A stretch of DNA of 64,000 nucleotides from Tubulanus polymorphus. Lineage: Eukaryota; Animalia; Nemertea. Positions 163-59,294 of the stretch are shown in pieces. The translations under genes were made by a program, and so were the position numbers. The notes below the pieces were generated by a model that worked only from the letters and a program-made list of their open reading frames with translations, did no database searches and was not told where the DNA came from. The stretch spans positions 22,776,210 through 22,840,209 of the forward strand of contig NC_134030.1 in NCBI RefSeq assembly GCF_964204645.1, written 5' to 3'. The number at the start of each line of letters is the position of its first letter. Within the stretch, counting starts at the first letter, position 1.

Positions 163-1611
163 TACTTTTGGTATAAAGTTTAACGTGTGCAACTATAGAT
201 TAGTAAAAGTGCAAGCAAGTTACGCAGTGTCATCGGTTCAATTGTCGGCTCAATATCAAACATAGCCACGTGAAGACGCCATGTTTTAAGCGTTAAACTA
301 AGAATGTTTATAAGTCATCACAGTTTGTTCACGGTTTGTATCGATGTGAATATTTGTTTATTTATCTATTTGTTTTCAGTTGACGAGTGTTTGGGTGAAT
401 GCACTAAAACAATGAGTGATAAATGGAATACTGGTGAGTTACTCCCCTCATGAGTAACCCTTTATGAGAGGTACTCATGAGTAACCCTCATAAGTACCTC
501 TCATAAGTACTCCTCATGAGTACCTCTCATGAGTACCCCTTATGATCAGTACCTGTATTCATACCTGACATCTTGAGTACAATTTGAGTACAGGACCTAA
601 ATACAAATCGTAATTTGGGTGCCTGAGTACCAAAGCTATTGGACCTTGAATTAGTGACGGGATATGTCATTGTAGTGAGTACATGAAGTACCAAATACAG
701 ATACTCAACTGAGTACCCGGTCCCGTTACCTGAATCGTTTAAATGATGTAATGATCAGAAATCATGAAGTTGAAACAAACGGCAAACTAAATCAGATTTC
801 TGTGAGCTTATATTTCATGTTTTAATATTTTTAGACGATTTTAAGGGGCGCAACATGATTTTAGAGACAGGTAAATATTCCGTATATAATTCACATAGGG
901 CCGGTTCATCACTACTCAAAGTTAATACTAGTCTAAGACGATATCAGTTCTACAACCGATCTCACAACTTTAAGACGAATTGTGAACTTAGGTTTCGACT
1001 ATGGAACCTGGTTCAATCACAAACCAGTTTTTATCTTAAAAATCTATTTGATTTTCTATCTATTACCATGAATTTTTTTCAATCAAGCACAAACGTTTCA
1101 ATGAAAGTAATGAGTTAGGAGTCTAGATCCCTCCTAATCCCTGAACTCCTAAGACTTGACTCCTAAGCTGAGTCTTGAAATGGGCTAAATCCAACAAAAA
1201 ATATAAAATATAGCTGCGAAGCAGCGCTAACGGGTTTTCTGACAAGCCATGCGGCCAAAACAAAAGGAATAAGAGAAGATAAAAATATTTCATTTGCGGA
1301 ATTCGAACTCGATGTGGCACCTTCAGAAATAAAAAAATTATTGCCGGGGATTCGAACCAGTTATAACTGCATAAAATAAAAAAATAAAAACACTCGTCAA
1401 CTGAAAACAAACAAATAAATAAATAAATTTTGACATCGATGCAAACTGTGACAAAACAGTGATGACTTATAAACATTCTTAGTTTAACACTTAAAACACG
1501 GCGTCTTCACGTGGCTATGATTAAGCGGACAATTGAACCGATGATACTGCGTAACTTGCTTGCACTTTTACTAATCTATAGTTGCACACTTTAAACTTTA
1601 TACCAAAAGTA
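163..1611. repeat. ~230 bp inverted duplication (163-392 vs 1388-1611)
   Basis: 1388-1611 is a diverged reverse complement of 163-392 (e.g. tacttttggtataaagttt / aaactttataccaaaagta). The left arm includes the acceptor of exon 380-433. Confidence 0.9.
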
Positions 1612-1844
1612 TGAGTGAATATAAGTTTATGATTGAATATCTAAGCAGAAGACAATTCTATTGTGTTCACTATTGTATTTCGTATTATGTTTATATTGTA
1701 GGGCGAAGTAGTGAAATGTCTGACGATGGTGGAGTAAGTCAGCGGCCATCAAGAGGTTATGGCCGGTCACCTGATGTTGGACAAGGTCAATCTAGTGGTG
1801 ATAGTAACGTAATGAGTGGTTATGGTAGATCGAGCTATCGTTGA
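380..1844 (+). CDS. 3' end of an upstream type-B receptor copy (B0); exons 380-433, 835-870 and terminal exon 1702-1844 (GRSSEMSDDGGVSQRPSRGYGRSPDVGQGQSSGDSNVMSGYGRSSYR*)
   Basis: Exons have AG/GT flanks, are phase 1, and the internal two are 54 and 36 nt. They are homologous to B1 exons 29413-29454 and 29832-29867 and to B2 exons at ~58866 and 59257. The terminal exon lies in ORF 1611..1844. The rest of the gene is upstream of the window. Confidence 0.7.
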
Positions 1845-4572: not shown

Positions 4573-7500
4573 ATGATGTTGAAGAACTGCGTCGTAGTTT
4601 TACTACAACTGGGAAATATACACAGTACAGAATTGTCTCGAATGAAGAGAGATGAGAAAAGTAAGTTATTCAAATTATCAGTGACTCTTTCCTCTTGTTT
4701 AGTTTACGCGTAGTATAATCGTTCCACAAACTTAAAACATATCAATTATTTTCAGGTGTCCCACATATTGAACCTTACCCAGTTCCCACGGGTCGACTCG
4801 ACCGGAAAACCCAAGGAGACGAGATAGTTTATAAATGCAAACTACTGTTTGAAAAGTCGGATCGTTCGTTGATATTTCAACAGAAGAGTCGAGGTTCTGA
4901 ATCATGGGGTCCGGTTCGAGGTGATATACAACTTCACAGTTATAACGATAACACCTTAGTTTACGCGAATTTGAGCTTCACAGCAGATTTCAAGCTACAC
5001 AATGGATCATCATTTAGATGTCTTGTAAAGGATAATCCTACAGATCCGAAGCCGGTCCAGTTCGATACAATCGTAGTTCGTGGTAAGTAACAGTTCATTT
5101 CCTTATTGTTATCTCAAACGAGGGGAATTTACAATCAATCAATCAATCAATGCATCTATAACTTGTTGATATTTCATTATCAGTAAGGAAGTTATCAGGC
5201 GCTATTTTCAGGCAATCAAACACGATGGTTTTTAATCCAAAAATAGTTGAACATTTCCATGAAAAAAGCATTATCTGCGCATGCACAAAAATCGACGGTC
5301 AACGTTTCTATGGAGATTTTTGTACAAAATGCAGTATCAACAAAATCCTCAGATAAAACTATATCTTCAATGAAAAATTCCAACATATATCTCAAAAAAT
5401 AAAAAAATCAATAACGCAAAATGTGTGTAATCGAGTGTGTAATCAAGCGAATATTTCATTTTATATCAGCCCCCTTTTATATTGGTCTCAGATTTAGCAG
5501 ATTCGGTTTGTCGAACAATGGAATGTGGAGAACAGTGTCATTTTGTTCGTGATGGTTTTAATAATCAGAACAAATAAACTTTTTAAACTTCATCATTCAT
5601 CTTCAAATCAACAACAAAGTAATAACAGTTTATTGTTCATCTCATTATTTTTATAAACGTCGAATGAAACATGAAGTGACTTTTCAGAATTCATATTGCT
5701 GCTGTCATAGTTGAAATTGTCGACTGTTAGACGCGAGGTACGGAAATCGTAGCCTGATTTCTATTCTATTTTCATTTCAGGTAATACAACTTCTGACCTA
5801 CCAAAGGTGAGTATCTGGCCGTCAAACCCACAATATTGTTAAACTGTGTCCAGAAACAAATAAAACCCATTCAACATTGAAAAATGGGTTCATCGTCAAA
5901 TAAAACTAGCAATAACTGTGGAACTTAGTATCCAGGGTAAAATAAAATGCACTATTAAATCCTTAGACGTTTTATAATAGCTAAATACAAGTATGATGTT
6001 TTTTCAGCGCATTTAGAATCGTTACGGGTTGATTGTTGTTGATGATCGCAGTGACCAGTTCACAATATGCGATAAAATGGTCGTTCATAATAGCAATTTC
6101 ATGATTCTTACATCTTTCAGACTACATCAGACCTCCATCACCGAACTATTGTGATACTTTACATCACGTGTGGAGCGACTGCATTCATTTTGATCGTTCT
6201 CATCGCAGTATTCACTACTCGCAGGTACGAACTCGACTGGAAAACAGTTTCAGTTCAGTTTATTCACTCCACAAGTTATAATAAAATTGCACAGAGCACA
6301 AAAGTAGCGCATAGATTACAGCATATTACAAAAATATAATGATATTATTAATAATGATTATATTAATAATAATAACAATTATGATAATAGTAAAAATAAT
6401 AATACTAATAGTGATAGCAGTAATATAATACTTATAATAATAATAATTATAATTATAATGAAATTATAATGCAAAGATGAGGCGGAATTGTCGTATCGAG
6501 ATCCGATAATTATACACTATATTAGGTAAATGATTTGATACCTTTTTGATAAATATCGCCAGATTGAGCAAAGTTTTACAGCTCGAACAGAAAAGGTTAT
6601 GTAGGGTATTTTCATTGGGATGTCGCCAGTAGTAACTAGGTATAAATTTGTCTCAGGCTTTGAAAAAAGGGACATACTAAAAGAAAATGGAATTCGTCTC
6701 CAGTTGCTGCCAAATTACATTTCTGACAAATTCTATGGTTTCGCTCAATCTGGCGATATCTACCGATTTCAATAGGTAACTTATGGTTTGAGCATCTGAA
6801 TCGACACAAGGCTTGGTGGAGTCTGGGGGGTAATACGGGTACACAGTACCGGCTTACATACGTACATACATACGGGAACACGGCATACACTGGGGCCGGT
6901 TTCACAAAGCGTAATTAACCCTTAATTATGATTAAATCAGTAATCATGATTAAATTATCATGATAATCAAGTTAGGTGTTTCACAAAACGTAATAAACCC
7001 TTAATTATGATTAAATCACTAATCATGATTAAATCAAGTTAGGTGTTTCACAAAACGTAATTAACTTTAATTATAATTAAGTTAATTACAAAATTTAATT
7101 CCCCTCTAGAGTGTAAATAAACCATTCAATCATCATTAGTTTATTATTGAAAACAAAAGCTGCAGATATTATTCATGGAATTTGGTGTTTATTAATTGAC
7201 GAAGGCAATTCCTACACTTATTCCTAGTTTTTCAGATTGTTTGGCTGAATAATTTGGATTTTTTGCCTTTTGTAAAAATAATACCCTAAATTTTATTGAT
7301 TTATTTTCAAACATCCTATGTTTTTGTCAGCACGACCACCACATACTTAGAAGTATTGAATTAATTGATTTTGTCCATAGATTTCTGTCCGTAGAGTACA
7401 TATCTATGGAGTTATGGTGTTAAAAAGTATCACTGCTCGGAAATAAACCCCAAGGATTATATTTCGCTGACTGGAGGTGAGTTTCTATTTAGAAACTTTA

Positions 7501-10500
7501 GAGACATCTTGCTATGTTGTTCAACTTGTTCCTGAGACTTTCAGATAAAACTTTTACTCCCAAAGGAGTGAATTTCTCTTTTCCTCTAAACAAGGAAGGT
7601 TGTTAATGCTTGGACAGGAAACGGCTGTCTAAAAGTTCCGCCATTTTGATACAGTTAAATTGTAATTAAGTTGCCTAATTATGTAATAGTTAATTTTGTA
7701 ATTAAACCCTTTCTTGAAACACAATTTTAATCGTTATTAACTAATCATGATTAAAAAAATTTAGGTCCTAATTATAATTAAAAGTTAATTATGCTTTGTG
7801 AAACCGGTCCCCTGCTGATTATTATCATGTGTTTACTATTTACTAGCAAATTCTTCAAAAAATTATCTCCTTTCGGCCAATCTGATTACTATAAAAGAGG
7901 AAGTCAAAATACAGTTTACTCGCAGACCGGTAGGTGCTGCCACCTATGCATATGGCAAAGCGAACCAAGATTGACTTACAAAACTTCAAAACACGGTTCA
8001 AGGCCCATCACGATTTATCCTTAATTATTGAGGCCACACGAATAACTTGAGCTAAAACCTGACGGCCGAGGAAAACCGATACCGGTATTCACCCAGTGGG
8101 TGGAAAAAAACCAAAAACGCCAACACGCATGCGCAAACTAAAAAATTACCCTAAAACAATGGATCCGGACTCGACTAGGAACCGGACAAATAAAACACCG
8201 GCAAAACTATTACAATCATCGCCTTTTTTGAAGTTTTGCTGAATCTAGAAATATTCTGTCGCCAAGTCAAATATGTTTCAAAAGAAGTGCACGCTGTGCT
8301 GACCGCCTACTAATACAAACGCATCTGGTTGATTAGCAAACGTCAAATCGTAGGCAGAAACTTTTCTGCGGTTTTTAATAGATTTCCAGCGAGCTTTTGA
8401 TAGTGGTCTACCCGAGGCCTTGTTTATCAAGTCAATTAGAGGCGGAATTAATGGTTATTTTTATAGGACAGTGAAAGATCATGTACAGTCATGCTGTGTC
8501 ACAGGTTCAGAATAAATCTCATCTATCTGCACCTTTCCCAGTTAAAGAAGGGGTGTATCAGGGTACTATACTAAGCCCACTGCCTTTTGATATTTTCATT
8601 AATGACGCATCCGAGATACTAACTACAAAGATGTCTTACGTAATTCTATGCTGAAAGAATTAATACACATTTCAGATCCAGACGTTCGTTCGATGAAGGT
8701 CATGGTCATGTGGAGACTTCAACACTACCTCAACAGCTCGAAGCAACCGATGTATTGTTAAACGTCTACGAAGATCCTGATGATGGTAATGATGATGATT
8801 CAAACGGAAAACCTGTGAGAAATACTGAAACTGGATTACAACATAACATACAAACTCCTAACGCCATGAGAGCCGAGAAGGGCAAGGACACAACTCCGTA
8901 CATGGATATGGGAGCCGGAAAGGCAGCTACTTTGAAAAAAGTTTCAACTCCTTTCATGAATATGGAAGCCGAGAAGGTCAAAGATACAACTCCATACATG
9001 AATGTGGGAGCCGGGAAGGCAGCTACTTTGAAAAAAGTTTCAACTCCTTTCATGAATATGGAAGCCGAGAAGGTCAAAGATACAACTCCATACATGGATA
9101 TGGGAGCCGGGAAGGCGGCAAGTCTGGAGAGAGATACAGCTACAAACATGGATTTGAAAATAGATGATAATGAAATTTATTCTTACGCTCTTGTTGAATT
9201 TGATCTCAGGAAAAATGCGATAGAATTTCAGAACACATCATTTCATCAAGCTATGGAAGCCGGGCGGGGCAAAGATACAAATCCTTACATGGATATGGAA
9301 GCCGGGAAGGCAGCGAGTTTGAAAGAAGTTTCAACTCCTTTCATGAAGACGGGAGCCGAGAAGGACAAAGACACAACTCCATACATGAATGTGGGAGCCG
9401 GGAAGACATCGAGTCTGAAGAAAGTTTCAACTCCTTTCATGAATATGGAAGCCGAGAAGGCCAAAGATACAACTCCATACATGGATATGGGAGCCGGGAA
9501 GGCAGCTACTTTGAAAAAAGTTTCATCTCCTTTCATGAATATGGAAGCCGAGAAGGTCAAAGACACAACTCCATACATGGATATGGGAGCCGGGAAGGCG
9601 GCTACTTTGAAAAAAGTTTCATCTCCTTTCATGGATATGGAAGCCGAGAAGGTCAAAGATACAACTCCATACATGAATATGGAAGCCGGGAAGGCAGCTA
9701 CTTTGAAAAAAGTTTCATCTCCTTTCATGGATATGGAAGCCGAGAAGGTCAAAGATACAACTCCATACATGAATATGGAAGCCGGGAAGGCAGCTACTTT
9801 GAAAAAAGTTTCATCTCCTTTCATGAATATGGAAGCCGAGAAGGTCAAAGATACAACTCCATACATGAATGTGGGAGCCGGGAAGGCAGCTACTTTGAAA
9901 AAAGTTTCATCTCCTTTCATGAATATGGAAGCCGAGAAGGTCAAAGATACAACTCCATACATGAATGTGGAAGCCGGGAAGGCAGCTACTTTGAAAAAAG
10001 TTTCAACTCCTTTCATGAATATGGAAGCCGAGAAGGTCAAAGATACAACTCCATACATGAATGTGGGAGCCGGGAAGGCAGCTACTTTGAAAAAAGTTTC
10101 AACTCCTTTCATGAATATGGCAGCCGAGAAGGACAAAGACACAACTCCTTACATGAATGTGGGAGCCGGGAAGGCAGCTACTTTGAAAAAAGTTTCATCT
10201 CCTTTCATGAATATGGAAGCCGAGAAGGACAAAGACACAACTCCTTACATGAATATGAAAGCTGGGAAGGCAGCTACTTTGAAAAAAGTTTCATCTCCTT
10301 TCATGGATATGGAAGCCGAGAAGGTCAAAGATACAACTCCATACATGAATGTGGGAGCCGGGAAGGCAGCTACTTTGAAAAAAGTTTCAACTCCTTTCAT
10401 GAATATGGCAGCCGAGAAGGACAAAGACACAACTCCTTACATGAATGTGGGAGCCGGGAAGGCAGCTACTTTGAAAAAAGTTTCATCTCCTTTCATGAAT

Positions 10501-10692
10501 ATGGAAGCCGAGAAGGACAAAGACACAACTCCTTACATGAATATGAAAGCTGGGAAGGCAGCGAGTTTGAAGAAAGTTTCAACTCCTTATATGAACTTGG
10601 GAGTCGAGAAGGTCAACGATACAACTCCATACATGGATATGGAAGCTGGGAAGTCGGTGAGTTTGAAGAAAAATACAATTCTACATAGATGA
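4573..10692 (+). CDS. Type-A receptor A1: single-pass membrane protein with one Ig-like domain and a cytoplasmic tyrosine-motif array (~853 aa); exons 4573-4660, 4756-5082, 5781-5806, 6121-6224, 8676-10692
   Basis: All junctions are GT-AG and join in frame (phases 1,1,0,2). Exon 1 MMLKNCVVVLLQLGNIHSTELSRMKRDEK is signal-like. Exon 2 is Ig-like (YKC...SWGP...NGSSFRCLV). Exon 4 is the TM IVILYITCGATAFILIVLIAVFTT followed by RR. The last exon continues into ORF 8710..10692. Structure matches A2. Confidence 0.85.
6530..6830 (-). mobile_element. Non-LTR retrotransposon (LINE) ORF2 C-terminal fragment
   Basis: Minus-strand peptide LCRFRCSNHKLPIEIGRY...RICQKC...GDEFHFLLVCP matches the Cys/His-rich C-terminus typical of invertebrate LINE ORF2. 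Confidence 0.8.
6892..7812. mobile_element. Non-autonomous DNA transposon (MITE), PIF/Harbinger-like
   Basis: ~28 bp terminal inverted repeats ggggccggtttcacaaagcgtaattaac / gttaattatgctttgtgaaaccggtccc, subterminal taattatgattaaa repeats, possible CTG target duplication. Not present in the A2 intron. Confidence 0.75.
8370..8625 (+). mobile_element. Degenerate LINE reverse transcriptase fragment
   Basis: ggggtgtatcagggtactatactaagcccactg...gatattttcattaatgac translates to GVYQGTILSPLxFDIFIND, the RT GVxQGxxLSPxLF motif. Confidence 0.7.
8870..10670 (+). repeat. Coding tandem repeat, 96 bp / 32 aa unit (DTTPYM[DN][MV][GE]AGKAATLKKVS[TS]PFM[ND]MEAEKVK)
   Basis: The 96 nt period is read directly (gtttcaactc at 8941 and 9037). 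The array is interrupted once at ~9130-9260. Confidence 0.95.
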
Positions 10693-11409: not shown

Positions 11410-12080
11410 CGTTCGTGACACTTTTTCTTCTTCTTCAGTTATATCTGGTTTCGAATCACCGGCGATTTATTTTGAAAATCGTCGAATCTTTCCAAAATAC
11501 GATATAATTTTACATATTTTTTGTACAAACAAGATTCTCGAAAAAGAACGCAGCATGGACTTATTGTAAATTTGTTTTTTTTCTCCTGTTTTCTTTTTTC
11601 CTGATTTTATTGTTTTGCATTTCCGCGATAAAATATTGATTTAATTTGATTTGAATTGAATTGACTGCTGTGGTGACACTTTTTTTATCTTCTTCAGTTA
11701 TATCTGGTTTCGAATTACCGGCAATTTATTTTGTTTACAATTTCTACAACTAATCAGAGTCCTAATTTTAAGCGTGTTCAATGCATAAAATCTCTCTATC
11801 AGTTCAAATGAAAGATGTAATGATTTGTTTTCTGTACCTTTCCAATGATTTATGATGGCATCAAATCGTCGAATCTTTCCAAAAATACGATAGAATTTTA
11901 CATGTATTTTATACAAACAAGATTAGTCGCATTACTTCTCGAAAAAGAACGCAGCATGAACTTATTGTAAATTTGTTTTTTTCTCTTGTTTTCTTTTTTC
12001 TTGATTTTATTGTTTTGCATTTTCACGAAAAAATATTGATTTAATTTGATTTGAATTGAATTGACTGCTGTGGTGACGGC
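11410..12080. repeat. Locally duplicated interspersed repeat (two diverged direct copies)
   Basis: tcttcttcagttatatctggtttcgaa and aatcgtcgaatctttccaaaa...ttgactgctgtggtgac each occur twice. Related sequence is at ~39480-39700. Confidence 0.7.
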
Positions 12081-44500: not shown

Positions 44501-47500
44501 TCTACAGCGACAGGTGTACACTTCCAGCTGCAAGTGAACAGTGGAGCAGGAGGGACCTGGACTCCAATACCACTCGGTATATCGACGGTGTGGAAAATTG
44601 TACCCGAGGCTGGTAAACAGTATAAATGTGTAGCCACTAATTCAGCAGGAACAAAAGAAAGTCAAATCTACCAATCAGATGTGATTAGTGAGTATGGCGG
44701 GAAACCTGTATGGTTCTCCAAAAATGCAACTGAACCTAATTTCAATATTGTAGAATGCAAATGGGCTAAAAAAAAAACCTTACGACTTCAAAGGGACTCC
44801 CACAATCAGTTCAGAAAAAGACGAAAGGATCGTGAAGTAAATGAATTTATGTTAGATCTTCCTTTCAGCGTTAAATTCATTGTCATCATCAGGCAAATTC
44901 AAGCGTTGACTCTACAAGAACTTATCGTCTTTTCTGAACTGATTGACAGATCTCTGGTGCTGACTCGGATGACAATTACTAAACCAGTAGCCTTCACACA
45001 TTTACTGTTCATTGTCGGTTATCTGACAATACATGTATTTTTTGTGTCAAATTTCAACGCTCTTATTCTCTGTGGAAACAAGTCCGCATATCCTTTCATT
45101 CAGCACTTATCAAATAATGCTGGGAAAAATAGAAGAAATGTTTCCTGTGCACTTGGTATTTTTTGTATATAATTTGTATTATAGGTATAAAGATAAATGA
45201 AAACCCGTGTAAACTGCATGAATTCAAACCATCACTGGCTTGTACTTGTGAAGCCACTAGTAAGATTGGTAATCCAAACATCAAAGTAAAATGGTATGCT
45301 GATGGATATAGAGGTTCCAAAAAAATTGAGATTTTCAAAGAGCAAGGGGTAAATACTGCGCTGAAAGATGGATTAATCAACAGAAATCAGATGTATTATC
45401 TGTACAAGATTGACACAACATTGACTCAATGTCGTTTATGGAATTATAATGGGATAGAGTTACCGGAACCACTTCAAAAACAAATACTACATCAAACTAA
45501 AATGGACGTTACGTGTAAGTTGTAACATATTTTCATGAGAAAATTTCCATACAATATCAAACTGAAGTCTGATAGTTAGAACATTCTGCCGTGGTGTCCA
45601 CATATGAATGTCCCTGTCTTGTGACGTAAGAATTTAAGCTTTTTCGGTTAGAAGTTATTTATTTAGATGAAAAAATCAAACGTGTCCCTTGAGAGTTGGA
45701 CTTAAATCAAACATTATCGCCCATTTTCTCCTTTTACCTCATATTTATTATTTAATTATTGTAACAACACAAAAGTTCGCATTGTATTCCCATTAATATG
45801 TAATGTAAAAACCATTGCAGTAAAATAGTTGAAAAATTATAATATTAAAAACCAATTCAGTTGAAAAGGATTCAATTCAATTAAAGAATTTAGCAAACAT
45901 TGAATGATATCCAAAAAGTTCTTCTTTTCAGATTTTCCTGATGAAATTCTGACGAACGATACTTATACGGGACAACCTGACATTAGAACTGAAGGAGAAG
46001 TTGTAGAATATATTTGTAGAACAGAAGGTGGAAGGCCCGATCCTACAGTGATATACCAACAGAAGAGAAGAGGTTCTGAACAATGGGAGCCAATTCCTGA
46101 TCCACAACCTCGTAAAGTACCCCTCAAAGGGACGTTAAAAGGTTTTGACACGACCTACAAGTTCAATGCTGATTTCAAACTGCACAATGGAACGTCATTT
46201 CGATGTGCTGTAGAGGAGAACCTTACGTTTCCAGAACCTCAGCAATTTAATCCAATCATCGTTCATCGTAAGTAACAGATTTATTGTTGTATTTCAGAAA
46301 AGATCTTCGGCTTTTGGTGTTAAGAGTTCTCTTTGGAATAGTACCAACCCCAGTCCTGTATACCTATCCACCCTCGGCATATGGCAGATATTTGTAACAA
46401 CTTTGATTTTGTGTTTTCAATCAGATTTTGCTGCACCAGTTTACAAGAAATCCAGTGAAAATAAAACAAATGCAGCGTATATTGTGACAGTTAATAGTTA
46501 CCCATTGACTCAACAAGTTACATGTGACCCTCCAGCTGTCGTTCAAAAACTATCAACCTATCAGTGGAATATAACGATACCTATCGTAAATAGTACCACA
46601 ACTGACTATAGAGGGCGGTGTTTGGCTGACGGTATTAATGAAAGGGTTATTGATGTCGCTGGTTATCATAACGCCGGTCCAACTGATGATCTAGGTAAGA
46701 TTCCGGGTCACAAACGGATGATTTTTATCTGAATCTGAACAAATGTTTTAGGTCCTCGGCGTCATCATCTCTTAACTGGATGAATTTTATGCAGTCTTAC
46801 GTCGCCGTAGGAAAAGTCGCAACAAATTCGTCTTTAAGATCCGCCATTTTATATTTTCATTTCTATTTACTAAGTTTAAGTCATCATTTGGATAAGCCAT
46901 TTACATATTGATCTGAAGACATTACTCAAAGTTATCATCGTGGAAAGTCCAAAATATTCAGCTTTCTAACTTTTTATTTAGAAGTCGTTTAACCCGATCA
47001 AGGAACAATTAGTTTCAGTTAGTTATCGGAAATTGCTGAACTTAAAGTAAATTCAAATATTAATCACTTGTGGATATTTTACATTCAAATTTCCAATTCT
47101 ATTTGAAAGTTTTTGCTTCAATTCAATTGCTGATACTTTTATCACTAGTTACAATAGAAATATTTACAGCTTTATATAATCTGATTTAATTGCTGCTCAA
47201 TTTCAGTTTCTGATGGAGGGTATGGAGGCAGAGTGTTCGGTGCTGTAATCGGTGTACTGATATTAGTGATTCTGATAATACTGTTTATACTGTGGCGTCG
47301 TGGCTGCTGTAAGTTTTACCTAAAACCATCATTAAACAGTGATGAAAAAACTGTTGAAATAAAATACTAGGTCCAGTTCCACAGTTCTGAGTTAAGATTT
47401 AACTCAGAGTTAACTCATTCAAAATGAACTGATTTTAACTCAGAGTTAACTCTAACTCACAACTGTGGAACTGGGTCCTGTATTATTTCTAATTGACAGT

Positions 47501-50500
47501 GCGGTGCAGAAAACCTAATGATGAACTGTGTAGATGTGGAAATTGTAAGTTCTGTTATAATTCATTAACACAATGCTTAAAATTTAAAAATAGTTTACAA
47601 GCCTTGAGGGATTCGGGGTCTTTTAGGTTGCCAGATACATTTCATTCTCAATTATCTGTGAAAATCTTTAATCTCGGGACCCTAATTGCACAGTCTTCTT
47701 CCGAATATGTGGTCGTCAACTATTAGACTGGTCTTAAGTCGTGAGATTGGTTATAGAACTAAAATATGTACAGACTGGTCTTAAGTTGTTAGATTGGTTA
47801 TAGAACCAAGATGAGCTTAGACTGGTCTTAAGTCGATAGATTGGTTATAGAACTAAAATATGTACAGACTGGTCTTAAATTGTTAGATTGGTTATAGAAC
47901 CAAAATGAGCTTAGACTGGTCTTAAGTTGTTAGATTGGTTATAGAACTAAAATGAGCTTAGACTAGTCTTAAGTTGTTAGATTGGCTATAGAACTAAAAT
48001 GAGCTTAGACTGGTCTTAAGTTGTTAGATTGGTTATAGAACCAAAATGAGTTTAGACTGGTATCAATTTGTTAGATTGGCTACAGAACTAAAATGAGCTT
48101 AGACTGGTCTTAAGTTGTTAGATTGGTTATAGAACTAAAATGAGTTTAGACTGGTATCAATTTGTTAGATTGGCTACAGAACTAAAATGAGCTTAGACTG
48201 GTCTTAAGTTGTTATTGGTTACATAACCAAAAATGAGTTAAGACTAGTCTTGAATATAAGCCGTAACTGTAAAACTAGCTCCTACAAAACATTTAGTTCA
48301 TTGTCAATTAAGATGATGTAATCTGCAATCTATAAGATTATCCGCTGACAAGACCGGTCTCGACAGTGGCAGATAATTGAGAGTTCATGAGGTCTGAAAT
48401 TGGCCTCACCTCTAGATACGCTCAATATCGCATACATGATTATTGCAAGTTAACATAATTTGTTTGTTTGTTTTCAGTGACTTGCAAATTACCTACTGCC
48501 GATGAACCTGATAATAAGGATGACTCCTCAGATGAACTGTGTCATTGTTGCTGCTGTGAGTTCTATATATAAACTGATAATGATTAAGAGTCAGTAACTG
48601 TAGAATAAACTGTTGTATTATTTTCTATTTGCAGTGCTGTTGAGAAGGGAGCCATGTACATGTGATTACTGTAAGTTGTATTAACATTGAAAACATTGAT
48701 CACAAAATAAATTCCCAAACTCTCGAGAAATTAATTTTCTAATTCGCAAACTGGACGGTTGATGAAGGTTACGCAGTATCATCGGTTCAATTGTCTCAAA
48801 ATCTATCATACCATTAGCTACCATTGTGTGTGGCATTTACGATATCCAAATCACAGCATCATCCATTTTCTTGGTTGGATCAATGTGTCAGGTTTTGTTG
48901 TGTGTCAGGTGAACGTGCATCATGTAGGACAAACAGTATTTCTGTTTTCTAATTTACAGTCACGCGTTTGGGTCCGGAATCTAAAGATGTGATTGAATTG
49001 TTGCGTTGGACAAGTGAAACCTGGTATCGAAGAGGTAAGATTCTCTCACATGATTTAATGCACATATTCTCAGATATCGGTTTGATGATTTTAGGTGTTG
49101 TTTTCTCTTTGTAGATCATGAGAATTGGGTGAAAACACGTGACCAACTGCAGCCGGGTATTTATTAACCCTTTATTTCCATAACATGTATAATATCTTGC
49201 ATGAACACAGTACCTGATGCCCTAATGTAATGAAGCAGTACATGTTGTTTATAATAATCGCTGTGAATCATGTACAGGATGATGGTTTTTAATTTATATA
49301 TTTGTAGCTGGAGACTTTGAGGTCATTGACACATTCAGTCCATGTATAATCATCATATGAATTGAATCAAAATTGTTTATTTATCAATCAACTATTTGCT
49401 TGTGACGTGAGTGAATTCATTTGGAACTTGATTTACTATGAATTATCTTTCATTTCGTTTATAGAAACTGTTAGAATAATTGTCGATGTTTACGGAACTG
49501 AGAATAATTGGGAGATAACGAGAGATAAGGATAAACAAGGTAAGAGGAGTGATGACTCAGTTGCCAGAGGAAGTGCAGAACCGACTGATTGGTCCCCTGC
49601 AAGTCTCTCTAAACACGACACTTCTGCCTCCTATCTTCATCCAGCAGTAATTCAAACTGTTTGATGCACAGTTTATTTGACTATTGAACAAATAATTTCT
49701 ATATTTCATTTCAGCAAAAGCTATCAAAGAATTCCTGTTTGGACAGTTATCAAGTGATCAAAGTAAGTAATGGTTTACACATAGTTTGTGTTAAGTTCAT
49801 GTACACATGCACATTAATGTGAACATGCACATGTGAGTTGTGTGAACATGTACATGTGAGTTATTGTTACATGTACATGTGAGTTATGTATTCATGTTAT
49901 GATAACGTGTACATGTGCATGTGAGTAATACATGCATGTACACGTGAATGATACATACATGTGAGGCATGCGAACATGTGCATGTGAATTAAGTATACAT
50001 GTTCATGTAAGTTTACATGCACATGTGAGTAATGTGTGCATGTACATTTGATTGATACATAGTAAGTTGTGAGTTGCGGAAACATGTTCATGTAAGTTAA
50101 CATGCACATGTGATTTGTTACATGCGCATGTGTATTAAGTTCGATCAGTGTTTATATATTTCTAGGTATGTTGAATTTGGTGAAAAAAATTCTAAGTAAG
50201 TTTATAAAATCTCATATGAATTTTCTCTTCAACTCAAACCATGTCTCTAAATGTGTTAATTATCTATTGACAGGAAAATACGCGACAATAAACAATTTGA
50301 AAATGAAACTATCAAATGAGATCGGTAAGAGTTGATTAAATACAGTTATTGATGTATGAGTTTATTGATTATTATTCTACCGTCAACTCATTTTGTAAAT
50401 GTATTACAGATATATTACTGAACAAGAAGAGGTCAATAGATGGCGCTGATGCAGTTTACAATAGAGATGAAGGTACATGATTATCTACTGTTCAAATGAA

Positions 50501-53500
50501 ATATTCAGCTTTGCAGATAGAAATATAGCTAATTCCATTCAAGATGGCCGCTTGGCAGCCTTTTGGCAATAAGTCTATAAACCTTATAGAAGCGACCAGT
50601 TGAGAATTTGTAATAATTCACTGTGTTATTTCGTAAAATGGAATGTTACTGTAATCATATTTTTTTCCTAAACTCCTACCATTTTTGCTAAATCAAAATT
50701 TGAGATAAAAATTTCATCTTAAACATATCAGGCTAGAGATCAGAATATCAGACTTCTGCGATTGGACAACATCTCGCAATGTGTTTTGGGTGTAATTTGT
50801 TTTTTTATTTATTTTTTAAACAGTACCCAATAATCCGAATAACCATCAGTGCTAAATTCTAAGCTAATTACAAACCAAGTATTCAATTACAAGCTAATTA
50901 TTTGAATACATTTAAGATAAAGGATGAGCTGTTTTGGAATAATTGTTGATTGAGAGAGGGTCGTTTGAAATGTGCTACCCCTAAATCGCTGAAGGCTAAA
51001 GTCATATATAAATTTAATTGTTTATGGGATATAAACACTTCCTATATTGGGAAAACTAAACGACATTTGGCCATCAGGATTAAAGAACACAGATCAAAGA
51101 CTTCTGCGATTGGACAACATCTCGCAATTTGTCACACTTGTGAGCAGGAATTCAGTGACAACAAATTCAAAATTCTAGACAAAGGTTTATCTGATCTCGA
51201 CTGTAAAATTAGGGAGGCCCTGTTTATTAAAGCGCAACGACCCTCTCTCAATCAACAATTATTCCAAAACGGCTCATCCTTTATCTTAAATGTATTCAAA
51301 TAATTAGCTCGTAATAAAATACTTGGTTTGTAATTAGCTTAGAATTTAGCACTTGTAATTGTGTAACTTATGTTGTATATAAACCTGTAGTTTAATCATT
51401 TGATTCACTTGTATTTCACCCGATCAGGGGATATGATCCCGAAAATGTTCGTGTTAATAAACTGTATTTACTCATTAGAAAATGAGGTTTTTAGTGTTAT
51501 CGCTTCTATGGCTATTCGGATATTTGATCTCTCTTCCTAACATATCAGACTACAGCTTCAGAAATACTCAAGTTACAACAAAATAATCAGATATACACAA
51601 TCCAGAACAAAGAAACTAATTGAGAAATAAGATGTGATATAAATCAGGGGTAATGATACAGCATGAAACAGAATTGCAATTAAACTAATTTCAAATCTAT
51701 TTCCGTGTTTCAGATGAAGTTCATGTTAGTTTTATGACGCAATTGGATGAAGAGAAAAGACCCCTGACAGACAAAGAGAAAGAGTTCATCAGAGATGGTC
51801 AGTAAAACTATGATTTCTATCTGAGTTCAATTTTCACATGTAGTTGACGACCCAGATTTACCACAGAGTCTTAAAAGGTGTTGAAAGAACCTACTGGCGA
51901 AAATTGCTTTTTGAAAAAAAGTATTTTGGCATTTTTCAAGTTTTATTCAGATGTCTGTTAGTAATGATGAGTCATGTAGTTAACAGGGTTCAGTGATTCA
52001 TTGTGTTACCAATATTTAGGATTTATCTGTATTTATCGATTTGCAAAATAAATCGAGCGCCAAAAGAGCAACTGACTGCTCTCTGTGTGAATCTATTGAA
52101 CTTTTTTTGTAAGTTTCAAATCCCCAGTAAACGGTTATTGAATGTCTATATTTTCAGTCGCTTCAGCAGTTGAATCTATTGTTGATTTTTTTGCTAAAAT
52201 GTCCGGTGGGTTCCATAAATCATTTCAGTGAAATACTGTGGAGTTTGTTGTGGAATCATTGAATAATTGATTGTGTTTATTTTTACTGTAGATGCTGAAT
52301 TATGTGAACGAGGAATATTCAACATAAAACGTAGGTTTTAATTCTCATTTATCCTCGAATGAGTTTATGAAATACATGTGCTCTATAATCTACTTTACAT
52401 GTACATGTAGATTTTATCTGTACATGTACATGTTAGTTTTCTGAAGTATTTGTAAGTTCTGTGGTAAATACTTTTTCTCTATATTTCAGCTACTGCTGAA
52501 ATTGCTGGTAAGTTATAATATTCACTATGATGTTTAAACTGGTGCTGAGTCTGTTCAATTATAACTGAAATATCGCTGTATCTTTTTATAGAAAAGTTTG
52601 TTAAGGAAACTCTTCAAACAGAAGTTAAACAACAGAATGGTGAGTGTTCAGTTAAACTAGGAATCTATCGGGGGGGGGGGGGGGCATCAACTATGAACTG
52701 ATTACAAATTATACCTATTTTGTCTAATTACAGGAAAACTCGTCACACAAATAGAAAACCAGAAAGTAACTGATGAAACAAAGACTGGTTTGTTATACGA
52801 TAAACTGATTATCATAATTTATCCATAATCCATTCAGATGTTGTCAATATTAAACTATTTACCGGTACTAAAATCATGTAGATAGAAATTAACCCCGCAA
52901 TAGTGAATAATAGAAACTATCTTTATGGTTGGTATTACAGAAATGGGAGTGGCCGATCGGAACCGTTTTGTGAACAAAGATATTTGTGGTAAGACTGAAA
53001 ATGTTATTCTTTGATAATTTGTCACGCTTTGTAATTAATCGTTTCGTGAATGAGAAATCCGAGGTACATTAAAACCAGCTACCCGGTAATGTGCAACAAT
53101 TGGCAACGTTGTCAAAATTCATCCGCTTTGTGGGAAATTTAAGGTTTTATAAAACCCGGTTAATCCAGATGTATTTTGGTGAAATTCTAGTTTGAACTGA
53201 TCTAATCAATATTTATGTTATTCTATCCATGTATTCATTTGTAGAATCAGTTTTATTGGCGTCAAGTTTGCAGAAATTAGAAGAGAACAAACATTCTACA
53301 GAACTAGATAAAAGTGAGTGTAAATTTTCTTTGTTCTTAGAACTAAATTTACCGAGTATTTGATGACTATGAATTGAAGATGAAATTTGTTGATTATCAG
53401 AGGCATCTGTTTTGATTCAGAGCCACGTTAGTGGTGTTAAACTAGAATGTAGCTAGGTGACATTTTTTGTCGATGTGAATATTCTTCAGACCGAGTTCGA

Positions 53501-56500
53501 ATCATAGCTTGAAGAAACCATATTTTGATTGTCATGCATACATCACATGGGGTAGCTCTGAGAATATCCAAATCATATCATCATTAGAGGCTAGCTGAGG
53601 GTGATTTCTGTCCAAATGTTCCATTTTGGAAAATTATTTTTTCATTAATTTATTTCATTGTTCAACTAACTATATTTGCAGGTATTTATGAAATAGGCCG
53701 AGATGTTTTAGGTAAGAACTAAATAATGGTAACAAACTATGACTATTGAGGTCTAGGGTCGAAAGCAGACGCTTTAAACAAAAATTCTTGCAGAGAAACT
53801 TTGAATAAAGATTTTAGTCCTTTTCAATTATATTTTATATTTCTTGAGATTTTCTGTAAAGCTAGAAACTTGAAGGATTGAATATCTGATGAAAATATTT
53901 GATATTTGAAAAGAGGTTTAAAATAGCAGTGTTGATATTAGCAGTAGTTGATGCTGTGTTGGAATCATGAATTATATTCTTTTTTCAGAAATTAAATTGA
54001 AAATCGTAGTTTTCGAATCTATCAAAGGTAAGAGATCTATGTATGGATTACATCACAATCAGCAGGGTTTATTCCATCATTTTCCAAGATTCAACCTGAG
54101 CTCAATTTGTTTCCTGAGAACTCAATTTCAGTTCTGATGAAATTTTCCTGGTAATTTAGCTTTACGAATCACTTTTAGAATTGTTCGCTGGACGAGCTGA
54201 AAGATTTCAGAAAGAACTCAAAGAGAAACTGAAACAAGAGGAAAATGAAGAGAGAAAAAATGAGGAGGAATTGAACAGAATAATTCACAGTTCAGTTTGT
54301 CAGGCGTTTAAATGTATCACTGATATGAATGAAAGTAAATATCGATTTCATATATCAGATTATACATGCTCTTAACATGTAACATGCTACATGTAAATGA
54401 ATGCACATGTTACATGTTCATGTAAATGAATTCACATGTAACATGTTGGTTCTCTGATACATTTCAGAAACTCTGATGGATAATAAAGTTGTACGATATG
54501 GAGGTTTGTATATAATTCACATGTTTCAATCACAAACCAGTTTTTATCATAAATAATCTGTTTAATTTTCTCTATTTATATTTCAGTGAGTCCAGAAGAG
54601 ATAAGTGAGTTCTGATTGATATTTATAAATATTCTCAGTACACTAGACTGCGCGCTTGCCTCTGATTTCATGTTGTAATTTGTCATATTTACCTGTTTAT
54701 AAGTTGTTTGTGATGTCAGTGATTTTCTATATTGATAGATTCTAAACTACATGAATTAGCCGATAAAGAGTTTGAAAGTAGGAAATTAGGTACTGTACAC
54801 ATTACAAAGTGTAAAATTCAACATGTTTTATGTTTTAAATCTTATTGATGTTTATTATCAATGTTTATTACAGTCGGTTACTTTAATAGAATAAAGACAC
54901 CTGAAGAAATATTGCCTCTAAAACTGAATATACCGGCACAACTCCGCACTGGTAAGTGACTACACTGAAGTGGTACTGAGTGCTTGAACTTGAATTCAAT
55001 ACAGTAAAAATGTATTGCGAGTAATTTTGACAAGTTTAGAACGAGGCAAATCGGTTCATTACAAATTTTCTGTGTTTTTAAATCGTTGAAATTTCATTTA
55101 ATGTTTGTAGAGTTGGATTCAGCTGATCGACATCCAGTTATTTTATGGGATCGAGCAGGTATTGTATAAGTCTGTTATAAATCTAACCTGTTTAATGCCA
55201 CTGATCTCACCATGTATTTCATCGGTCCCAACAGTGGCTGGCATGATATACTATTTCTGTGATAATGGAATTATCAGCATCTTAGGAGCACTAGCCTGGA
55301 ATATTCTGCAACTGATCTTTGTCCCTCAAAAGACGGTTAACTCTTCTAAGTTCTTCTTGCAAAAAAATCCTTAATCTGATCGTTTAGGAATTACCAGAAA
55401 ATGTTCTTCTATTTTAAACTCGATTATGAGGAGCAGACCCTGAAAATAGTTTTCAAACCCTGATTTACTGGTCTTATAAATGAAGTTTTAAATTGAAACC
55501 AAGCTCAATGAATGTTGTGTCTATGTTTGTTGTTTTTAAATGAATTTCAGTGGAATATTTCAAGGATGAATTCATTATTGCAATACAATCTGATGAATCA
55601 TTGAAAACTGCTACTCAAACTGCTTTAGATAACAGTAAGTTACATCTACAATAAACTACATTTACATGACAGTAAACTACATTTACATCTACAGTAAACT
55701 ACGTTTACATCTACAGTAAACTACGTTTACATCTACAGTAAACTACATTTACATCTACAGTAAACTACATTTACATCTACAGTAAACTACATTTACATCT
55801 ACAGCAAACTACATTTACATCTACAGTAAACTACGTTTACATCTACAGTAAGTTACATCTACAATAAACCTACATCTACAGTAAATTACATTTACATCTA
55901 CAGTAAACTACATTTACATCTACAGTAAACTACATTTACATCCGCAGTAAACTACATTTACATCCGCAGTAAACTACATTTACATCTACAGTAAACTACA
56001 TTTACAGTAAACTACGTTTACATCTACAGTAAGTTACATCTACAATAAACCTACATCTACAGTAAATTACATTTACATCTACAGTAAACTACATTTACAT
56101 CTACAGTAAACTACATTTACATCCGCAGTAAACTACATTTACATATACAGTAAACTACATTTACATCTACAGTAAACTACATTTACATCTACAGTAAACT
56201 ACATTTACATCTACAGTAAACTACATTTACATCTACGGTAAACGAAATTTACATCTGCGGTAAACTACATTTACATCTACAGTAAACTACATTTACATCT
56301 ACAGTAAACTACATTTACATCTACAGTAAACTACATTTACATCTACAACAAACTACATTTACATCTACGGTAAACGAAATTTACATCTACAGTAAACGAA
56401 ATTTACATCTACAGTAAACTACATTTACATCTACGGTAAACTACATTTACATCTACAACAAACTACATTTACATCTACGGTAAACGAAATTTACATCTAC

Positions 56501-59294
56501 AGTAAACTACATTTACATCTACAACAAACTACATTTACATCTACAGTAAACTACATTTACATCTACAACAAACTACATTTACATCTACAATTAGATACAG
56601 TTACTCACTAAGATTGTAAATCATTGAAATTTGTTTGTTTTTTTTTAGAATCAAGCGAAATCAACGATTTGTTGAGGAAAGAAAACTTGGAAGGTAAAAT
56701 TGTCTTCTGAAACGTGGATAAGATGTTTGTTTTTACGAACCGAACAATTACACCGTTTAAAATGATTCAATGATTTCTTCTATTTTCAGTTGTTGATAGA
56801 ATTTATGTTGATGTGAAAAACAGAATGAAATCAATTCCTACAGGTTTGTATTTAAATAATTTACTATCAATTCTTGAATTTAAATGTAAGATATATTTCC
56901 TCTTGTTGAGGTTTTTGTATATATATATATATATAATAATAATATAATATACGATAAGTGATATGACGTGATATGACGTGATGAGATATGTGATATGTGA
57001 TATATCATATTCCGTCATATCGCGTATTTATTTATGTCTGAATTTACGTTCCTATTTGTGATTTCAGAGGAATTAAAGCAACGAGGAATCGTAGTTTATA
57101 GAAGTGAGTAGAATTCCACAGTTTCAAGTTCCCCGTAAGCTCCTAACCCAAAAGCTCCTAACCCGTAAACTCATAACCCGTAAACTCCTAACCCAAAAGC
57201 TCATAACCCGTAAACTCCTAACCCGTAAACTTCTAACCCAAAAGCTCATAACCCGTAAACTCATAACCCGTAAACTCCTAACCCAAAAGCTCATAACCCG
57301 TAAACTCCTAACCCGTAAACTCCTAACTCGTAAGCTCCTAACCCGTAAACTCCTATAAAACTATAGACTCCTAACCTGTATATTCCTAACACTAAACTCC
57401 AAACACTGAGACTGAACTAAATTCAACCATAGTAAAAGTGAACCGTATGAATTGACCTGTTTAGATATACTCAATGTTTATACATGAATTATTATGTTTT
57501 CTGTTTTTCAGTAAAAGATGTAACAGCGAGTAAGTACTCATAACAACTTACACATTAAAGTCTAAATAGATAGATTTATAAAATGATAAGTTGTGTTTTG
57601 ATAGCTCTTAAATCCAAAGAAACTGCTCAGAGTGATTTACAGATGATGAAAATGCTTCCTTCAACAGGAAGGATTGGTAAAGAATAATAATAATAATAAT
57701 AATAATAATCCCTGCAGTAATCTATTGTGTTTATTCTGTTTCAGGGATTCCCATTAAACGAATTATTAAAAACAGAATCCCACAGTTTAAAGGTGAATAC
57801 ATTATGTTGACTGTTAGGTGTTTAGTATACTAGCAAAGAACCAGCCGTCCTGAACGGGTTTTATCGTGATTGAGTTCGAGTTGATTATTTTGCTTCTCGT
57901 GTGGAATCCACCGATATTTCGCGTAAGGTCGACTGTATTTTGTTGGAGGATATTGTGATGTAATAGCAGCATAAATAGTTTTACATCAGTTGACATCGTG
58001 ATATTTTCTAAATTAATCTTAGCTCCTCATTACGTACATTGTAACATTGTATAATTACAGATTCACTAGAGCCTGTTTTAAAAGAGAAATGTAAAGAAGC
58101 TTCTGGTTTGTCAGCAAACAGCAGCATGAACCCTATCACGTGGATAGTATCAAAACAATGGGAATATGATATATCTACTGCGAGTAAGTTCACAGTGAAA
58201 TCAGTTTGTGATTTATAATAGAATTCTATTGTATAAAAACTTGTCTATTGTTTATTACATATAGTGTCTGAACTCAGTGAATTTACCAGTACAACTTTAA
58301 AGACAAACACGGGTTATTGGAAACTGGTCAGAGAATGTTTCGGTAAATAGTGAATTCTTGTTTGACTGAACGTTTTATTAAATGATTCGATTTTCAGGTT
58401 TTGAATAATAATTGTTGTGTTCTGTTTTAATAGGAGATGAAATTGACAGTGAAACAAATACAACTGAACTGACAAAAATAGGTGAATATCAATACAATAA
58501 CAACTTATCATTTAATTTAACAGAAATATGGTGATGTGGTGAATTTTGCGTTGAATACTTTGAAGAGGAAATCTATTGATGTCATCAGATTATCAGAGGC
58601 ATCTGCTTAGATCCAGAGCCATGTTTTAAGTGGTGTTATTGAACTAAGAATGTTGCTAGGTGACAGTTTGTATGGATCTGACCGAGTTTACAGTAGATTA
58701 TTATAATCAGTCACGTTGAGAAGAAACGTTTAAGCATTACCGGTACCAAATCAAATATTATCAGTTACAAAATCAATCAAACCGTGTTTTAAGTGTGAAA
58801 CTAAAAGTGTTTGAAAGTCATTGTTTGTTTCGATGCTAATGTTCATTTGTTTCATTTGTTTTCAGTTCATGAATGTTTAGGTAAATGCGCTAAAACAATG
58901 TGTGATAAATGGAGTTTTGGTGAGTACCTCTCATGAGTACCCCATTTGAGTACCTCTCATGAGTACCTTATTCAAATAACTACCAGGCATCTCTTGAGTA
59001 CTGTTGAGGACTTGAATTCAAATCGGAATTTGAGTAGAAAAGTTGAGTGAGTACCATTTATTAACTGTCAGGATATGTGATCAGTGTAGTGGTGAGTACA
59101 TGAGTACCAAATACAGACACTCAACTGAGTACCCGGCCCCGGTACCTGAATTATGTAAAGGCATTTAAAAGATATAATACATTGATCAAGTTGAAACAAA
59201 CTGCAAACTGAACCAGTTTTTCTGTGAACTTATATTTCATGTTTTATCATTTCTAGACGATTTTAAGAACCACAAGATGATTAAAGAACCCTAA
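41519..59294 (+). CDS. Type-B receptor B2: signal exon 41519-41636; four Ig-like exons 44397-44687, 45185-45514, 45932-46267, 46425-46694; TM exon 47207-47308; ~37 cytoplasmic micro-exons from 47500-47544; stop TAA 59292-59294
   Basis: Signal MRNQSRNLQQFELICVILLLILIPYSNSPQAFRLFKRNT, phase 1. Exons are collinear with B1. Domain 3 has YICRTEGGRPDPTV...W...FRCAV. The micro-exon length differences from B1 that I compared are multiples of 3 (78 vs 87, 72 vs 66, 123 vs 90 nt). Confidence 0.8.
42450..44440 (+). repeat. 82 bp tandem repeat spanning the acceptor of B2 Ig exon 1 (24 acceptor copies)
   Basis: First AG ends at 42510 and last at 44396. The difference of 1886 equals 23 x 82. Confidence 0.95.
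47369..47478. mobile_element. ~110 bp hairpin MITE
   Basis: Termini ggtccagttccacagtt / aactgtggaactgggtcc with internal inverted aactcagagttaactc. Absent from the B1 intron. Confidence 0.7.
47725..48250. repeat. 47 bp minisatellite, ~11 copies (counterpart of 18284-19560)
   Basis: Same unit in the same intron. Confidence 0.95.
50745..51538 (+). mobile_element. 5'-truncated Penelope-like retroelement (GIY-YIG endonuclease end) with an inverted partial copy at its 5' end
   Basis: ORF 50950..51303 reads VIYKFNC...YIGKTKRHLAIRIKEH...REALFIK...PSLN. 50845-50965 is the reverse complement of ~51235-51352. Flanked by a duplicated aacatatcag and absent from B1. Confidence 0.85.
55640..56590. repeat. 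22 bp minisatellite, ~43 copies (counterpart of 27273-27570)
   Basis: Same unit in the same intron. Confidence 0.95.
57130..57358. repeat. 15 bp minisatellite (aaactcctaacccgt)
   Basis: Explains the KLLTR-repeat ORF. Only about one copy is present at the homologous B1 site (~28190). Confidence 0.9.

What the first reader, a model, noticed from the sequence alone, without database searches (positions are those of the whole stretch)
380..59294. Tandemly duplicated two-gene Ig-receptor cassette resembling an invertebrate paired immune/allorecognition receptor cluster
Seen: the order B0-A1-B1-A2-B2 on one strand with ~30 kb period. A and B share an Ig domain but have unrelated cytoplasmic tails, and copies differ in domain number, tail length and Ig-loop sequence. 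Known: linked receptors with related ectodomains and different signalling tails define paired receptor families (KIR/LILR, SIRP, CD300), and Hydractinia Alr genes are clustered polymorphic Ig-like receptors with tyrosine motifs. Inference: this is an independently evolved recognition system in which A and B act together. I do not recognise either protein as a named family.
Basis: partly seen in the sequence, partly recalled or inferred. Interest (0 to 1): 0.92.

Follow-up and report, generated by a model that had tools for sequence, protein, structure and literature searches.

The report
Ribbon-worm paired Ig receptor gene family
A ribbon worm carries about 19 side-by-side copies of a two-gene receptor unit, in which one gene's inner tail is a repeat of docking sites for the enzyme PI3K and the other's inner part is either an unknown helical chain or a complete immune alarm module (NLR); it looks like an undescribed immune recognition family, but its function is untested.

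Summary
Observation confirmed. The genome is the nemertean Tubulanus polymorphus. The window holds B0(end)-A1-B1-A2-B2 on the + strand. A is signal peptide-Ig-TM plus one tail exon of minisatellite-built YxxM motifs (10 in A1, 19 in A2). B is 2-3 Ig, a spacer, TM and a helical tail of 37-46 symmetric phase-1 micro-exons with no tyrosine motif and no fold match. My B2 model equals RefSeq XP_074652441. The shared Ig is B's third domain, which B1 lacks. Genome-wide, 19 of 24 B genes have an A directly upstream, so this is no haplotype artefact. Six B genes run into a phase-1 NACHT-LRR exon (membrane-anchored NLR); the window's B genes do not. The scan noted those NLRs before, elsewhere in this genome. 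One pair duplicated as a unit across 3.9 Mb, but about 21 A-type tails are unpaired. No RNA reads were available. Allelic polymorphism, co-expression and binding are untested, and no ITAM/ITIM activating-inhibitory pairing was found. Best reading: a lineage-specific innate receptor pair, A docking PI3K and B sensing. It works like Botryllus FF/FcoR and sea-cucumber AjNLRC4 but belongs to neither. Allorecognition is unsupported.

The parts
380..1844 (+). B0, last three exons (380-433, 835-870, 1702-1844); its Ig exons and its upstream A0 lie before the window
   Evidence: A0 Ig at C6:22758545, B0 Ig2 at C6:22765259
4573..10692 (+). A1, 5 exons (4573-4660, 4756-5082, 5781-5806, 6121-6224, 8676-10692), 853 aa: signal peptide, one Ig, short stalk, TM, tail
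   Evidence: homologous to RefSeq A-type proteins P0001-P0011; no RefSeq protein for A1 itself was returned
8871..10653 (+). A1 tail minisatellite, 96-bp unit x18.5: 10 YxxM, 9 YMN[V/L] and 14 Phe-substituted FMxM units
14133..31982 (+). B1, 51 exons, about 1171 aa: signal peptide 14133-14220, Ig1 14783-15073, Ig2 15940-16272, spacer 16753-17022, TM 17876-17977, 46 cytoplasmic exons; lacks Ig3; donor of exon 25463-25501 is AT, not GT; exon 26545-26592 is a local duplicate
   Evidence: RefSeq P0013 (447 aa) covers only the first part
14265..14839 (+). 82-bp minisatellite (7 copies) that repeats the Ig1 splice acceptor and the first 42 coding bases
18059..31982 (+). B1 cytoplasmic micro-exon chain (18-156 nt, all multiples of 3, all introns phase 1): Cys-rich juxtamembrane exons, then predicted helices
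34775..38849 (+). A2, 5 exons (34775-34874, 34970-35305, 36482-36507, 37165-37259, 37796-38849), 536 aa
37989..38778 (+). A2 tail minisatellite, 42-bp unit x18.8: 19 YxxM motifs 14 residues apart, followed by one ITIM-like VTYINL
41519..59294 (+). B2, 43 exons, 1159 aa = RefSeq XP_074652441.1 (LOC141906884); ends early through a deletion that joins exon 59257 to the end of the last exon
   Evidence: B2-type deletion joint also seen in DNA run X1
42454..44438 (+). 82-bp acceptor minisatellite of B2 (24 copies)
45932..46267 (+). B2 Ig3 exon, paralogue of the single Ig of A; absent from B1

Best explanation
A lineage-specific innate-immune receptor family organised as a head-to-tail A-B gene unit that evolves by birth and death. 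Shown: architecture, motifs, gene order, copy number, tail swapping. Inferred: A and B sit together at the surface of phagocytic or epithelial cells; the variable distal Ig1/Ig2 of B and the variable Ig of A bind foreign ligands; clustering lets a tyrosine kinase phosphorylate A's YxxM array, which recruits class IA PI3K (YxN copies may bind Grb2) and drives engulfment or activation. Repeat number and Tyr-to-Phe changes would tune signal strength. B supplies an exchangeable cytoplasmic module: because every B intron is phase 1, exons and blocks can be lost, doubled or capped by a phase-1 NACHT-LRR exon, giving helical, short, NLR or helical-plus-NLR tails on one ectodomain.
For: 19 of 24 B TM exons have an A directly upstream on the same strand, at 8 separate places on 3 contigs; strict alternation read from DNA over 200 kb. 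A at C6:22.297 Mb and A at 18.380 Mb are 88% identical (next best 63%) and their B partners are sisters (99/95). Four RefSeq B proteins join the ectodomain and TM to NACHT (Pfam E 3e-14 to 1e-10) with Walker A intact; the NLR exon has a phase-1 acceptor. Variation is highest in A-Ig (50% identity) and B Ig1/Ig2 (78%, 73%; clustered, p<=0.002) and lowest in Ig3 and spacer (87%, 91%). A p85 gene is in the genome. p85 binds tandem phosphotyrosines 10-30 residues apart (PMC6937578); A2's spacing is 14. AjNLRC4, an Ig-TM-NACHT protein, binds microbes and drives phagocytosis (PMC8699970).
Against: No expression, co-expression or binding data. About 21 A-type tails and 5 B genes are unpaired. A-B and B-A gaps are alike (2.7-3.4 kb), and tandem duplication alone keeps neighbours together. 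No charged TM residue suggests a fixed heterodimer. dN/dS of the Ig exons is below 1 (0.56-0.68), so positive selection is not shown. The ten A copies of the large array are near-identical (six compared: 95%). The LRR match is below Pfam's cut-off (E 0.0008-0.035). The three B genes in this window have no NLR exon.
Confidence: 0.5

Rival explanations
1. A and B are both immune-type receptors but work independently; they stay adjacent only because segmental duplications copy 30-40 kb blocks.
For: About 21 unpaired A-type tails and 5 unpaired B genes; equal intergenic gaps; A subtype does not predict B tail type; A-type tails also occur behind PLAT or other ectodomains (P0007, P0009, P0010).
Against: The A-then-B order is kept at 8 places, through inversions and moves between contigs, while A-Ig diverged to about 50% identity; B tails lack tyrosine motifs, as FF genes do in the Botryllus pairs (PMC12582321).
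Confidence: 0.27
2. An allorecognition (self/non-self tissue compatibility) locus like Hydractinia Alr or Botryllus FF/FcoR.
For: Clustered, lineage-restricted Ig genes in linked pairs with tyrosine motifs on one partner, as in FF/FcoR. Nemerteans (Lineus) reject xenografts with memory (PMC2248247).
Against: No allelic polymorphism data; no ITAM in A tails or helical B tails and ITIM-like motifs in only 3 of 13 A tails; array copies are homogenised rather than diversified; Tubulanus is a solitary worm with no natural fusion that I know of (own knowledge); NLR tails point to microbe or damage sensing.
Confidence: 0.1
3. Non-immune recognition or adhesion proteins (neural wiring, gametes, regeneration) that use PI3K growth signalling.
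For: Ig domains and YxxM arrays also serve growth and adhesion receptors (established knowledge: IRS-1, PDGFR); distant hits of Ig2 are hemicentin-like proteins.
Against: No conserved orthologue outside the species in the searched sets; rapid birth and death with broken copies; repeated fusion to NACHT-LRR.
Confidence: 0.11
4. The two units are a mis-assembled pair of haplotypes.
For: Read depth could not be set against a genome-wide mean.
Against: Three tandem units here, ten in a second array, 24 B genes in all; B1 is as far from B2 (80-89% DNA identity) as from copies about 0.9-1.0 Mb away (76-86%).
Confidence: 0.02

Closest known systems
Botryllus schlosseri fester family / fester co-receptor (FF/FcoR) pairs (PMC12582321)
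   Same: Two lineage-specific Ig-superfamily families encoded as linked pairs that duplicate as pairs; tyrosine motifs on one partner only.
   Different: FF/FcoR are head-to-head, carry Sushi domains and ITIM/hemITAM, lack the DAP10-type YxNM motif, and are tied genetically to allorecognition. Here the pairs are head-to-tail, the motif is a YxxM repeat array, and the partner has a large helical or NLR tail. No homology seen.
Sea cucumber AjNLRC4 (PMC8699970)
   Same: Extracellular Ig domains, TM and intracellular NACHT in one protein (true of six B paralogues, not of B0-B2).
   Different: AjNLRC4 lacks LRRs and has two TM segments; the Tubulanus proteins have one TM, keep an LRR-like C-terminal region, come from a worm-specific NLR clade, and are mostly linked to a YxxM partner gene.
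Hydractinia Alr family (PMC9546547)
   Same: Clustered single-pass Ig proteins, one exon per domain, a spacer before the TM, divergent tails, pseudogenes.
   Different: Alr tails carry ITAM/ITIM; no obligate two-gene unit or NLR tail is described in the passages read; no homology seen.
Vertebrate paired receptors (KIR, LILR, SIRP, CD300) and YxxM chains (DAP10, CD28, BCAP)
   Same: Related ectodomains with different tails; YxxM as PI3K docking site.
   Different: Vertebrate pairs share near-identical ectodomains with opposite ITIM versus charged-TM adaptor signalling; not so here. Those chains carry one to a few YxxM, not minisatellite arrays of up to 19 (own knowledge, plus for BCAP).
Biomphalaria GRC/PTC2 clusters (PMC7494358)
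   Same: Spiralian clusters of lineage-specific single-pass membrane genes with an immune role.
   Different: Defined by allelic association with schistosome resistance; only the abstract was seen; no paired or NLR architecture compared.
Anthozoan membrane-bound NLRs (PMC3879445)
   Same: NLR with N-terminal transmembrane anchoring.
   Different: Three to four TM segments, no Ig ectodomain.

Membership tests
Classical paired receptors (KIR/LILR/SIRP/CD300) | Partners have highly similar ectodomains | tested here: not met
   A shares one domain with B at 45% mean identity; the two sets split 100/100
Classical paired receptors (KIR/LILR/SIRP/CD300) | One partner ITIM-bearing, the other with charged TM residue or ITAM | tested here: not met
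   No ITIM, ITAM or YxxM in helical or short B tails; no charged residue in the TM segments; ITIM-like motif in 3 of 13 A tails
Botryllus FF/FcoR | Genes linked as pairs that duplicate together | tested here: met
   19 of 24 B genes; one pair duplicated over 3.9 Mb with inversion
Botryllus FF/FcoR | Head-to-head orientation, Sushi domains, ITIM/hemITAM | tested here: not met
   Head-to-tail; no Sushi hit in Pfam; motifs are YxxM
Botryllus FF/FcoR | Co-expression of cognate pairs; copy-number variation between haplotypes | not testable with these tools
   No RNA run and no second assembly
Allorecognition locus (Alr, fuhc) | Extreme allelic polymorphism linked to fusion or rejection | not testable with these tools
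   Differences in DNA runs cannot be split from paralogues at 90% likeness
NLR (NACHT + LRR) | NACHT domain with Walker A and B, in B0, B1, B2 of this window | tested here: not met
   No NACHT match in or next to the window
NLR (NACHT + LRR) | NACHT domain with Walker A and B, in B paralogues P0012, P0015, P0047, P0048, P0052 | tested here: met
   Pfam NACHT above cut-off; Walker A in all five; second acidic Walker B position is Gly in P0012
NLR (NACHT + LRR) | C-terminal leucine-rich repeats | tested here: inconclusive
   LRR_14 E 0.0008-0.035 and LRR_FBXL18 E 0.023, all below curated cut-offs; not folded
PI3K-docking (YxxM) chain | Cytoplasmic YxxM motifs above chance and a p85 reader in the genome | tested here: met
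PI3K-docking (YxxM) chain | Tyrosine phosphorylation and p85 binding | not testable with these tools
   needs bench work
Ig superfamily | Ig-fold ectodomains | tested here: inconclusive
   Single exons give sub-threshold Ig/C2-set hits (E 0.001-0.14); whole B proteins reach Ig_2 E 5e-9 to 4e-4; A1's Ig has no hit of its own and is assigned by homology to B-Ig3; ectodomains were not folded

The most novel reading that the evidence does not exclude
The A-B unit is an animal counterpart of plant linked sensor/helper pairs: a membrane-tethered NLR with no death-fold domain either signals through the partner's YxxM array (NACHT oligomerisation clusters A and switches on PI3K) or guards A against microbial effectors that target phosphotyrosine signalling, and the phase-1 micro-exon chain is a platform on which cytoplasmic effectors are swapped.
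Probability: 0.17. Interest if true: 0.9.

Novelty: new variant of a known kind. Interest (0 to 1): 0.68.

Why it matters
Immune and self-recognition receptors of nemerteans are largely unknown, although graft rejection with memory was shown in Lineus decades ago. This family gives concrete candidates. It is a further, apparently independent case of gene-pair organisation of Ig receptors, with a different signalling code (minisatellite-tuned YxxM rather than ITAM/ITIM). It also shows step by step how a surface receptor acquires an NLR: one phase-1 exon lands on a chain of symmetric phase-1 exons. If A and B cooperate, it would link NLR activation to PI3K without a death domain. The gene models are already in RefSeq as uncharacterised proteins; I found no paper on them in the searchable library.

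Tried and rejected
RNA test: the search found no RNA holder; the three runs that map cover introns and show no GT-AG joints, so they are DNA. Helical tail: Pfam gave nothing above cut-off; AlphaFold models were poor (mean pLDDT 44 and 53) except one ~100-residue unit at 88-94; Foldseek, VIA-align (best Z 6.0) and Atlas (TM <=0.26) gave no match. Language-model hits to Sey1/GBP/GVIN1 helical bundles (0.91-0.75) are a weak lead only. The idea that the tail is five homologous repeats was not supported (hhalign probability <=7%). A putative exon at 28428-28493 (B2 57605-57676) was dropped: absent from RefSeq B2 and not found in five array copies. Positive selection on Ig exons was not shown; IQ-TREE omega values were not obtained. 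No solved-structure relative of the ectodomain by sequence. My own spliced models (A1, A2, full B1) were not sent joined to any search or fold tool; searches used single exons by reference or RefSeq proteins returned by the tools.
Full report
Source. Protein searches return only Tubulanus polymorphus (Nemertea) proteins as close relatives. The window is C6:22776210-22840209 of a 268-Mb, 77-contig assembly.

Observation. Self-comparison shows a direct duplication with a 28-30 kb offset. Using splice sites conserved in both copies I built B1 and B2 and A1 and A2. The 43-exon B2 model is identical to RefSeq XP_074652441.1. RefSeq's B1 model stops after exon 10 (447 aa), and no RefSeq protein for A1 or A2 came back, so these three models are sequence-based only. 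No RNA run was available: the runs that map are DNA. I did not send my own joined models to any search or fold tool; I used single exons by reference and RefSeq proteins returned by the tools.

Gene A. Signal peptide, one Ig-like exon, short stalk, uncharged TM, and one long last exon built from a coding minisatellite. A2 has 19 YxxM motifs at 14-residue spacing and one ITIM-like motif; A1 has 10 YxxM, 9 YMN[V/L] and 14 units with Phe in place of Tyr. Both counts exceed 1000 shuffles. Eleven RefSeq relatives have 1-12 YxxM; some carry other ectodomains, for example PLAT. YxxM is the p85 PI3K docking motif, and p85 favours tandem sites 10-30 residues apart (PMC6937578). A p85 iSH2 gene is in the genome.

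Gene B. Signal peptide, Ig1, Ig2, Ig3 (missing in B1), spacer, TM, Cys-rich juxtamembrane exons, then a long tail. Every intron is phase 1 and every internal exon a multiple of three, 46 cytoplasmic exons in B1. Paralogues lose single exons, double blocks of about 270 residues, or truncate, and keep frame. B1 itself has one dead donor and one duplicated exon. The tail is predicted helical, holds no YxxM, ITIM or ITAM, and has no sequence or fold match. A's Ig is a paralogue of B's Ig3 (45% identity; clean split in the tree).

The family. TM-exon, Ig and tail searches give 24 B genes on C6, C9 and C19. Nineteen have an A directly upstream on the same strand: three here, ten in an array at 21.75-22.10 Mb (alternation read from DNA for 200 kb), and six more at 18.34, 18.38, 22.30 and 22.39 Mb, on C9 and on C19. 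Five B genes and about 21 A-type tails are unpaired; these counts are lower bounds from hit lists. The A genes at 22.297 and 18.380 Mb are 88% identical, against at most 63% to any other, and their B partners are sisters with the same multi-Ig layout, so at least this pair moved as a unit. A haplotype artefact is excluded by copy number and by B1-B2 divergence equal to that between distant copies.

Tail swapping. B paralogues P0012, P0015, P0047 and P0052 join the same ectodomain and TM to NACHT, HD2 and an LRR-like region. In P0047 and P0048 part of the helical chain precedes the NACHT. The NLR part is one exon of about 930 codons with a phase-1 acceptor, so it can cap the chain at any point. 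By coordinates six B genes run into such an exon, five of them with an upstream A; two of the six (C9, C19) lack a full RefSeq model that I saw. Related soluble NLRs have short N-termini with RHIM-like VQIG repeats (below Pfam's cut-off) and no death domain hit. These joins rest on RefSeq predictions. The window's own B genes have no NLR exon. I reached the NLR link; the scan's earlier notes on other windows of this genome report the same NLR genes.

Variation. Mean identity among paralogues: A-Ig 50%, B Ig2 73%, Ig1 78%, Ig3 87%, spacer 91%, proximal tail 86-87%, distal tail 71-76%. Variable sites cluster in Ig1 and Ig2 (p<=0.002). Pooled dN/dS over seven B copies is 0.56-0.68 for the Ig exons and 1.26-1.50 for distal tail exons, the latter with intervals spanning 1. 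Positive selection is therefore not shown. A copies within the big array are 95% identical.

Mechanism. Shown: architecture, motifs, linkage, tail exchange. Inferred (0.5): A and B act as one surface unit in innate defence; variable Ig domains bind non-self, A's phosphorylated YxxM array recruits PI3K for engulfment or activation with strength set by repeat number, and B adds a scaffold or an NLR. Rivals: independent receptors that only co-duplicate (0.27), non-immune recognition (0.11), allorecognition (0.10), artefact (0.02).

Comparison. It works like Botryllus FF/FcoR in being linked Ig gene pairs with tyrosine motifs on one partner, but orientation, domains and motifs differ (PMC12582321). 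NLR-tailed members resemble AjNLRC4, which has Ig, TM and NACHT but no LRR (PMC8699970); multi-TM NLRs are known in anthozoans (PMC3879445). It fails the KIR/LILR definition and is not shown to be an allorecognition locus. Literature searches found no description of this family.

Verdict. New variant of a known kind; interest 0.68.

Noticed in passing
window 14265-14839 and 42454-44438; L001-L020: The 82-bp minisatellite that repeats the Ig1 acceptor occurs in all seven B copies examined (7, 24, 8, 7, 8, 4 and 2 units). Each unit holds an acceptor, 42 in-frame bases and a GT, so it could add 14-residue micro-exons; RefSeq uses only the last acceptor.
   Followed up: partly
P0049-P0059 (soluble NLRs on C8, C9, C32, C56): N-termini carry RHIM-like motifs (VQIG type), seven in tandem in P0057; Pfam RHIM only E 4.1 on P0049. 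Possible amyloid-signalling NLRs, the likely source of the exon captured by B.
   Followed up: partly
window 163-392 and 1388-1611: 230-bp inverted repeat (90%) that includes the acceptor of B0 exon 380; it flanks the stretch where B0 lacks seven distal exons.
   Followed up: no
window 50750-51540: Insertion in a B2 intron with 118-bp inverted ends (50848-50965, 51236-51353) and a 117-codon frame that by eye resembles a GIY-YIG endonuclease remnant; no Pfam hit.
   Followed up: partly
window 6636-6905 and about 12000-13400 (minus strand): Short frames that by eye look like decayed LINE retrotransposon pieces, inside an A1 intron and between A1 and B1; no Pfam hit of note.
   Followed up: partly
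P0007, P0009, P0010: The A-type TM and YxxM tail also sits behind a PLAT domain (P0007, E 3e-5) and behind other ectodomains, so A swaps ectodomains while B swaps tails.
   Followed up: partly
window 32600-33800: High-copy repeat between B1 and A2 (depth 30-100 times the flanks); about 1 kb of it is absent downstream of B2.
   Followed up: no
window 61835-61898: Short interstitial repeat containing TTAGGG-like units, among several minisatellites at 60363-63976.
   Followed up: no
G000:C9:4.2-5.1 Mb: Six genes with one or two tandem A-like Ig exons and A-like tails, with no B gene nearby.
   Followed up: no
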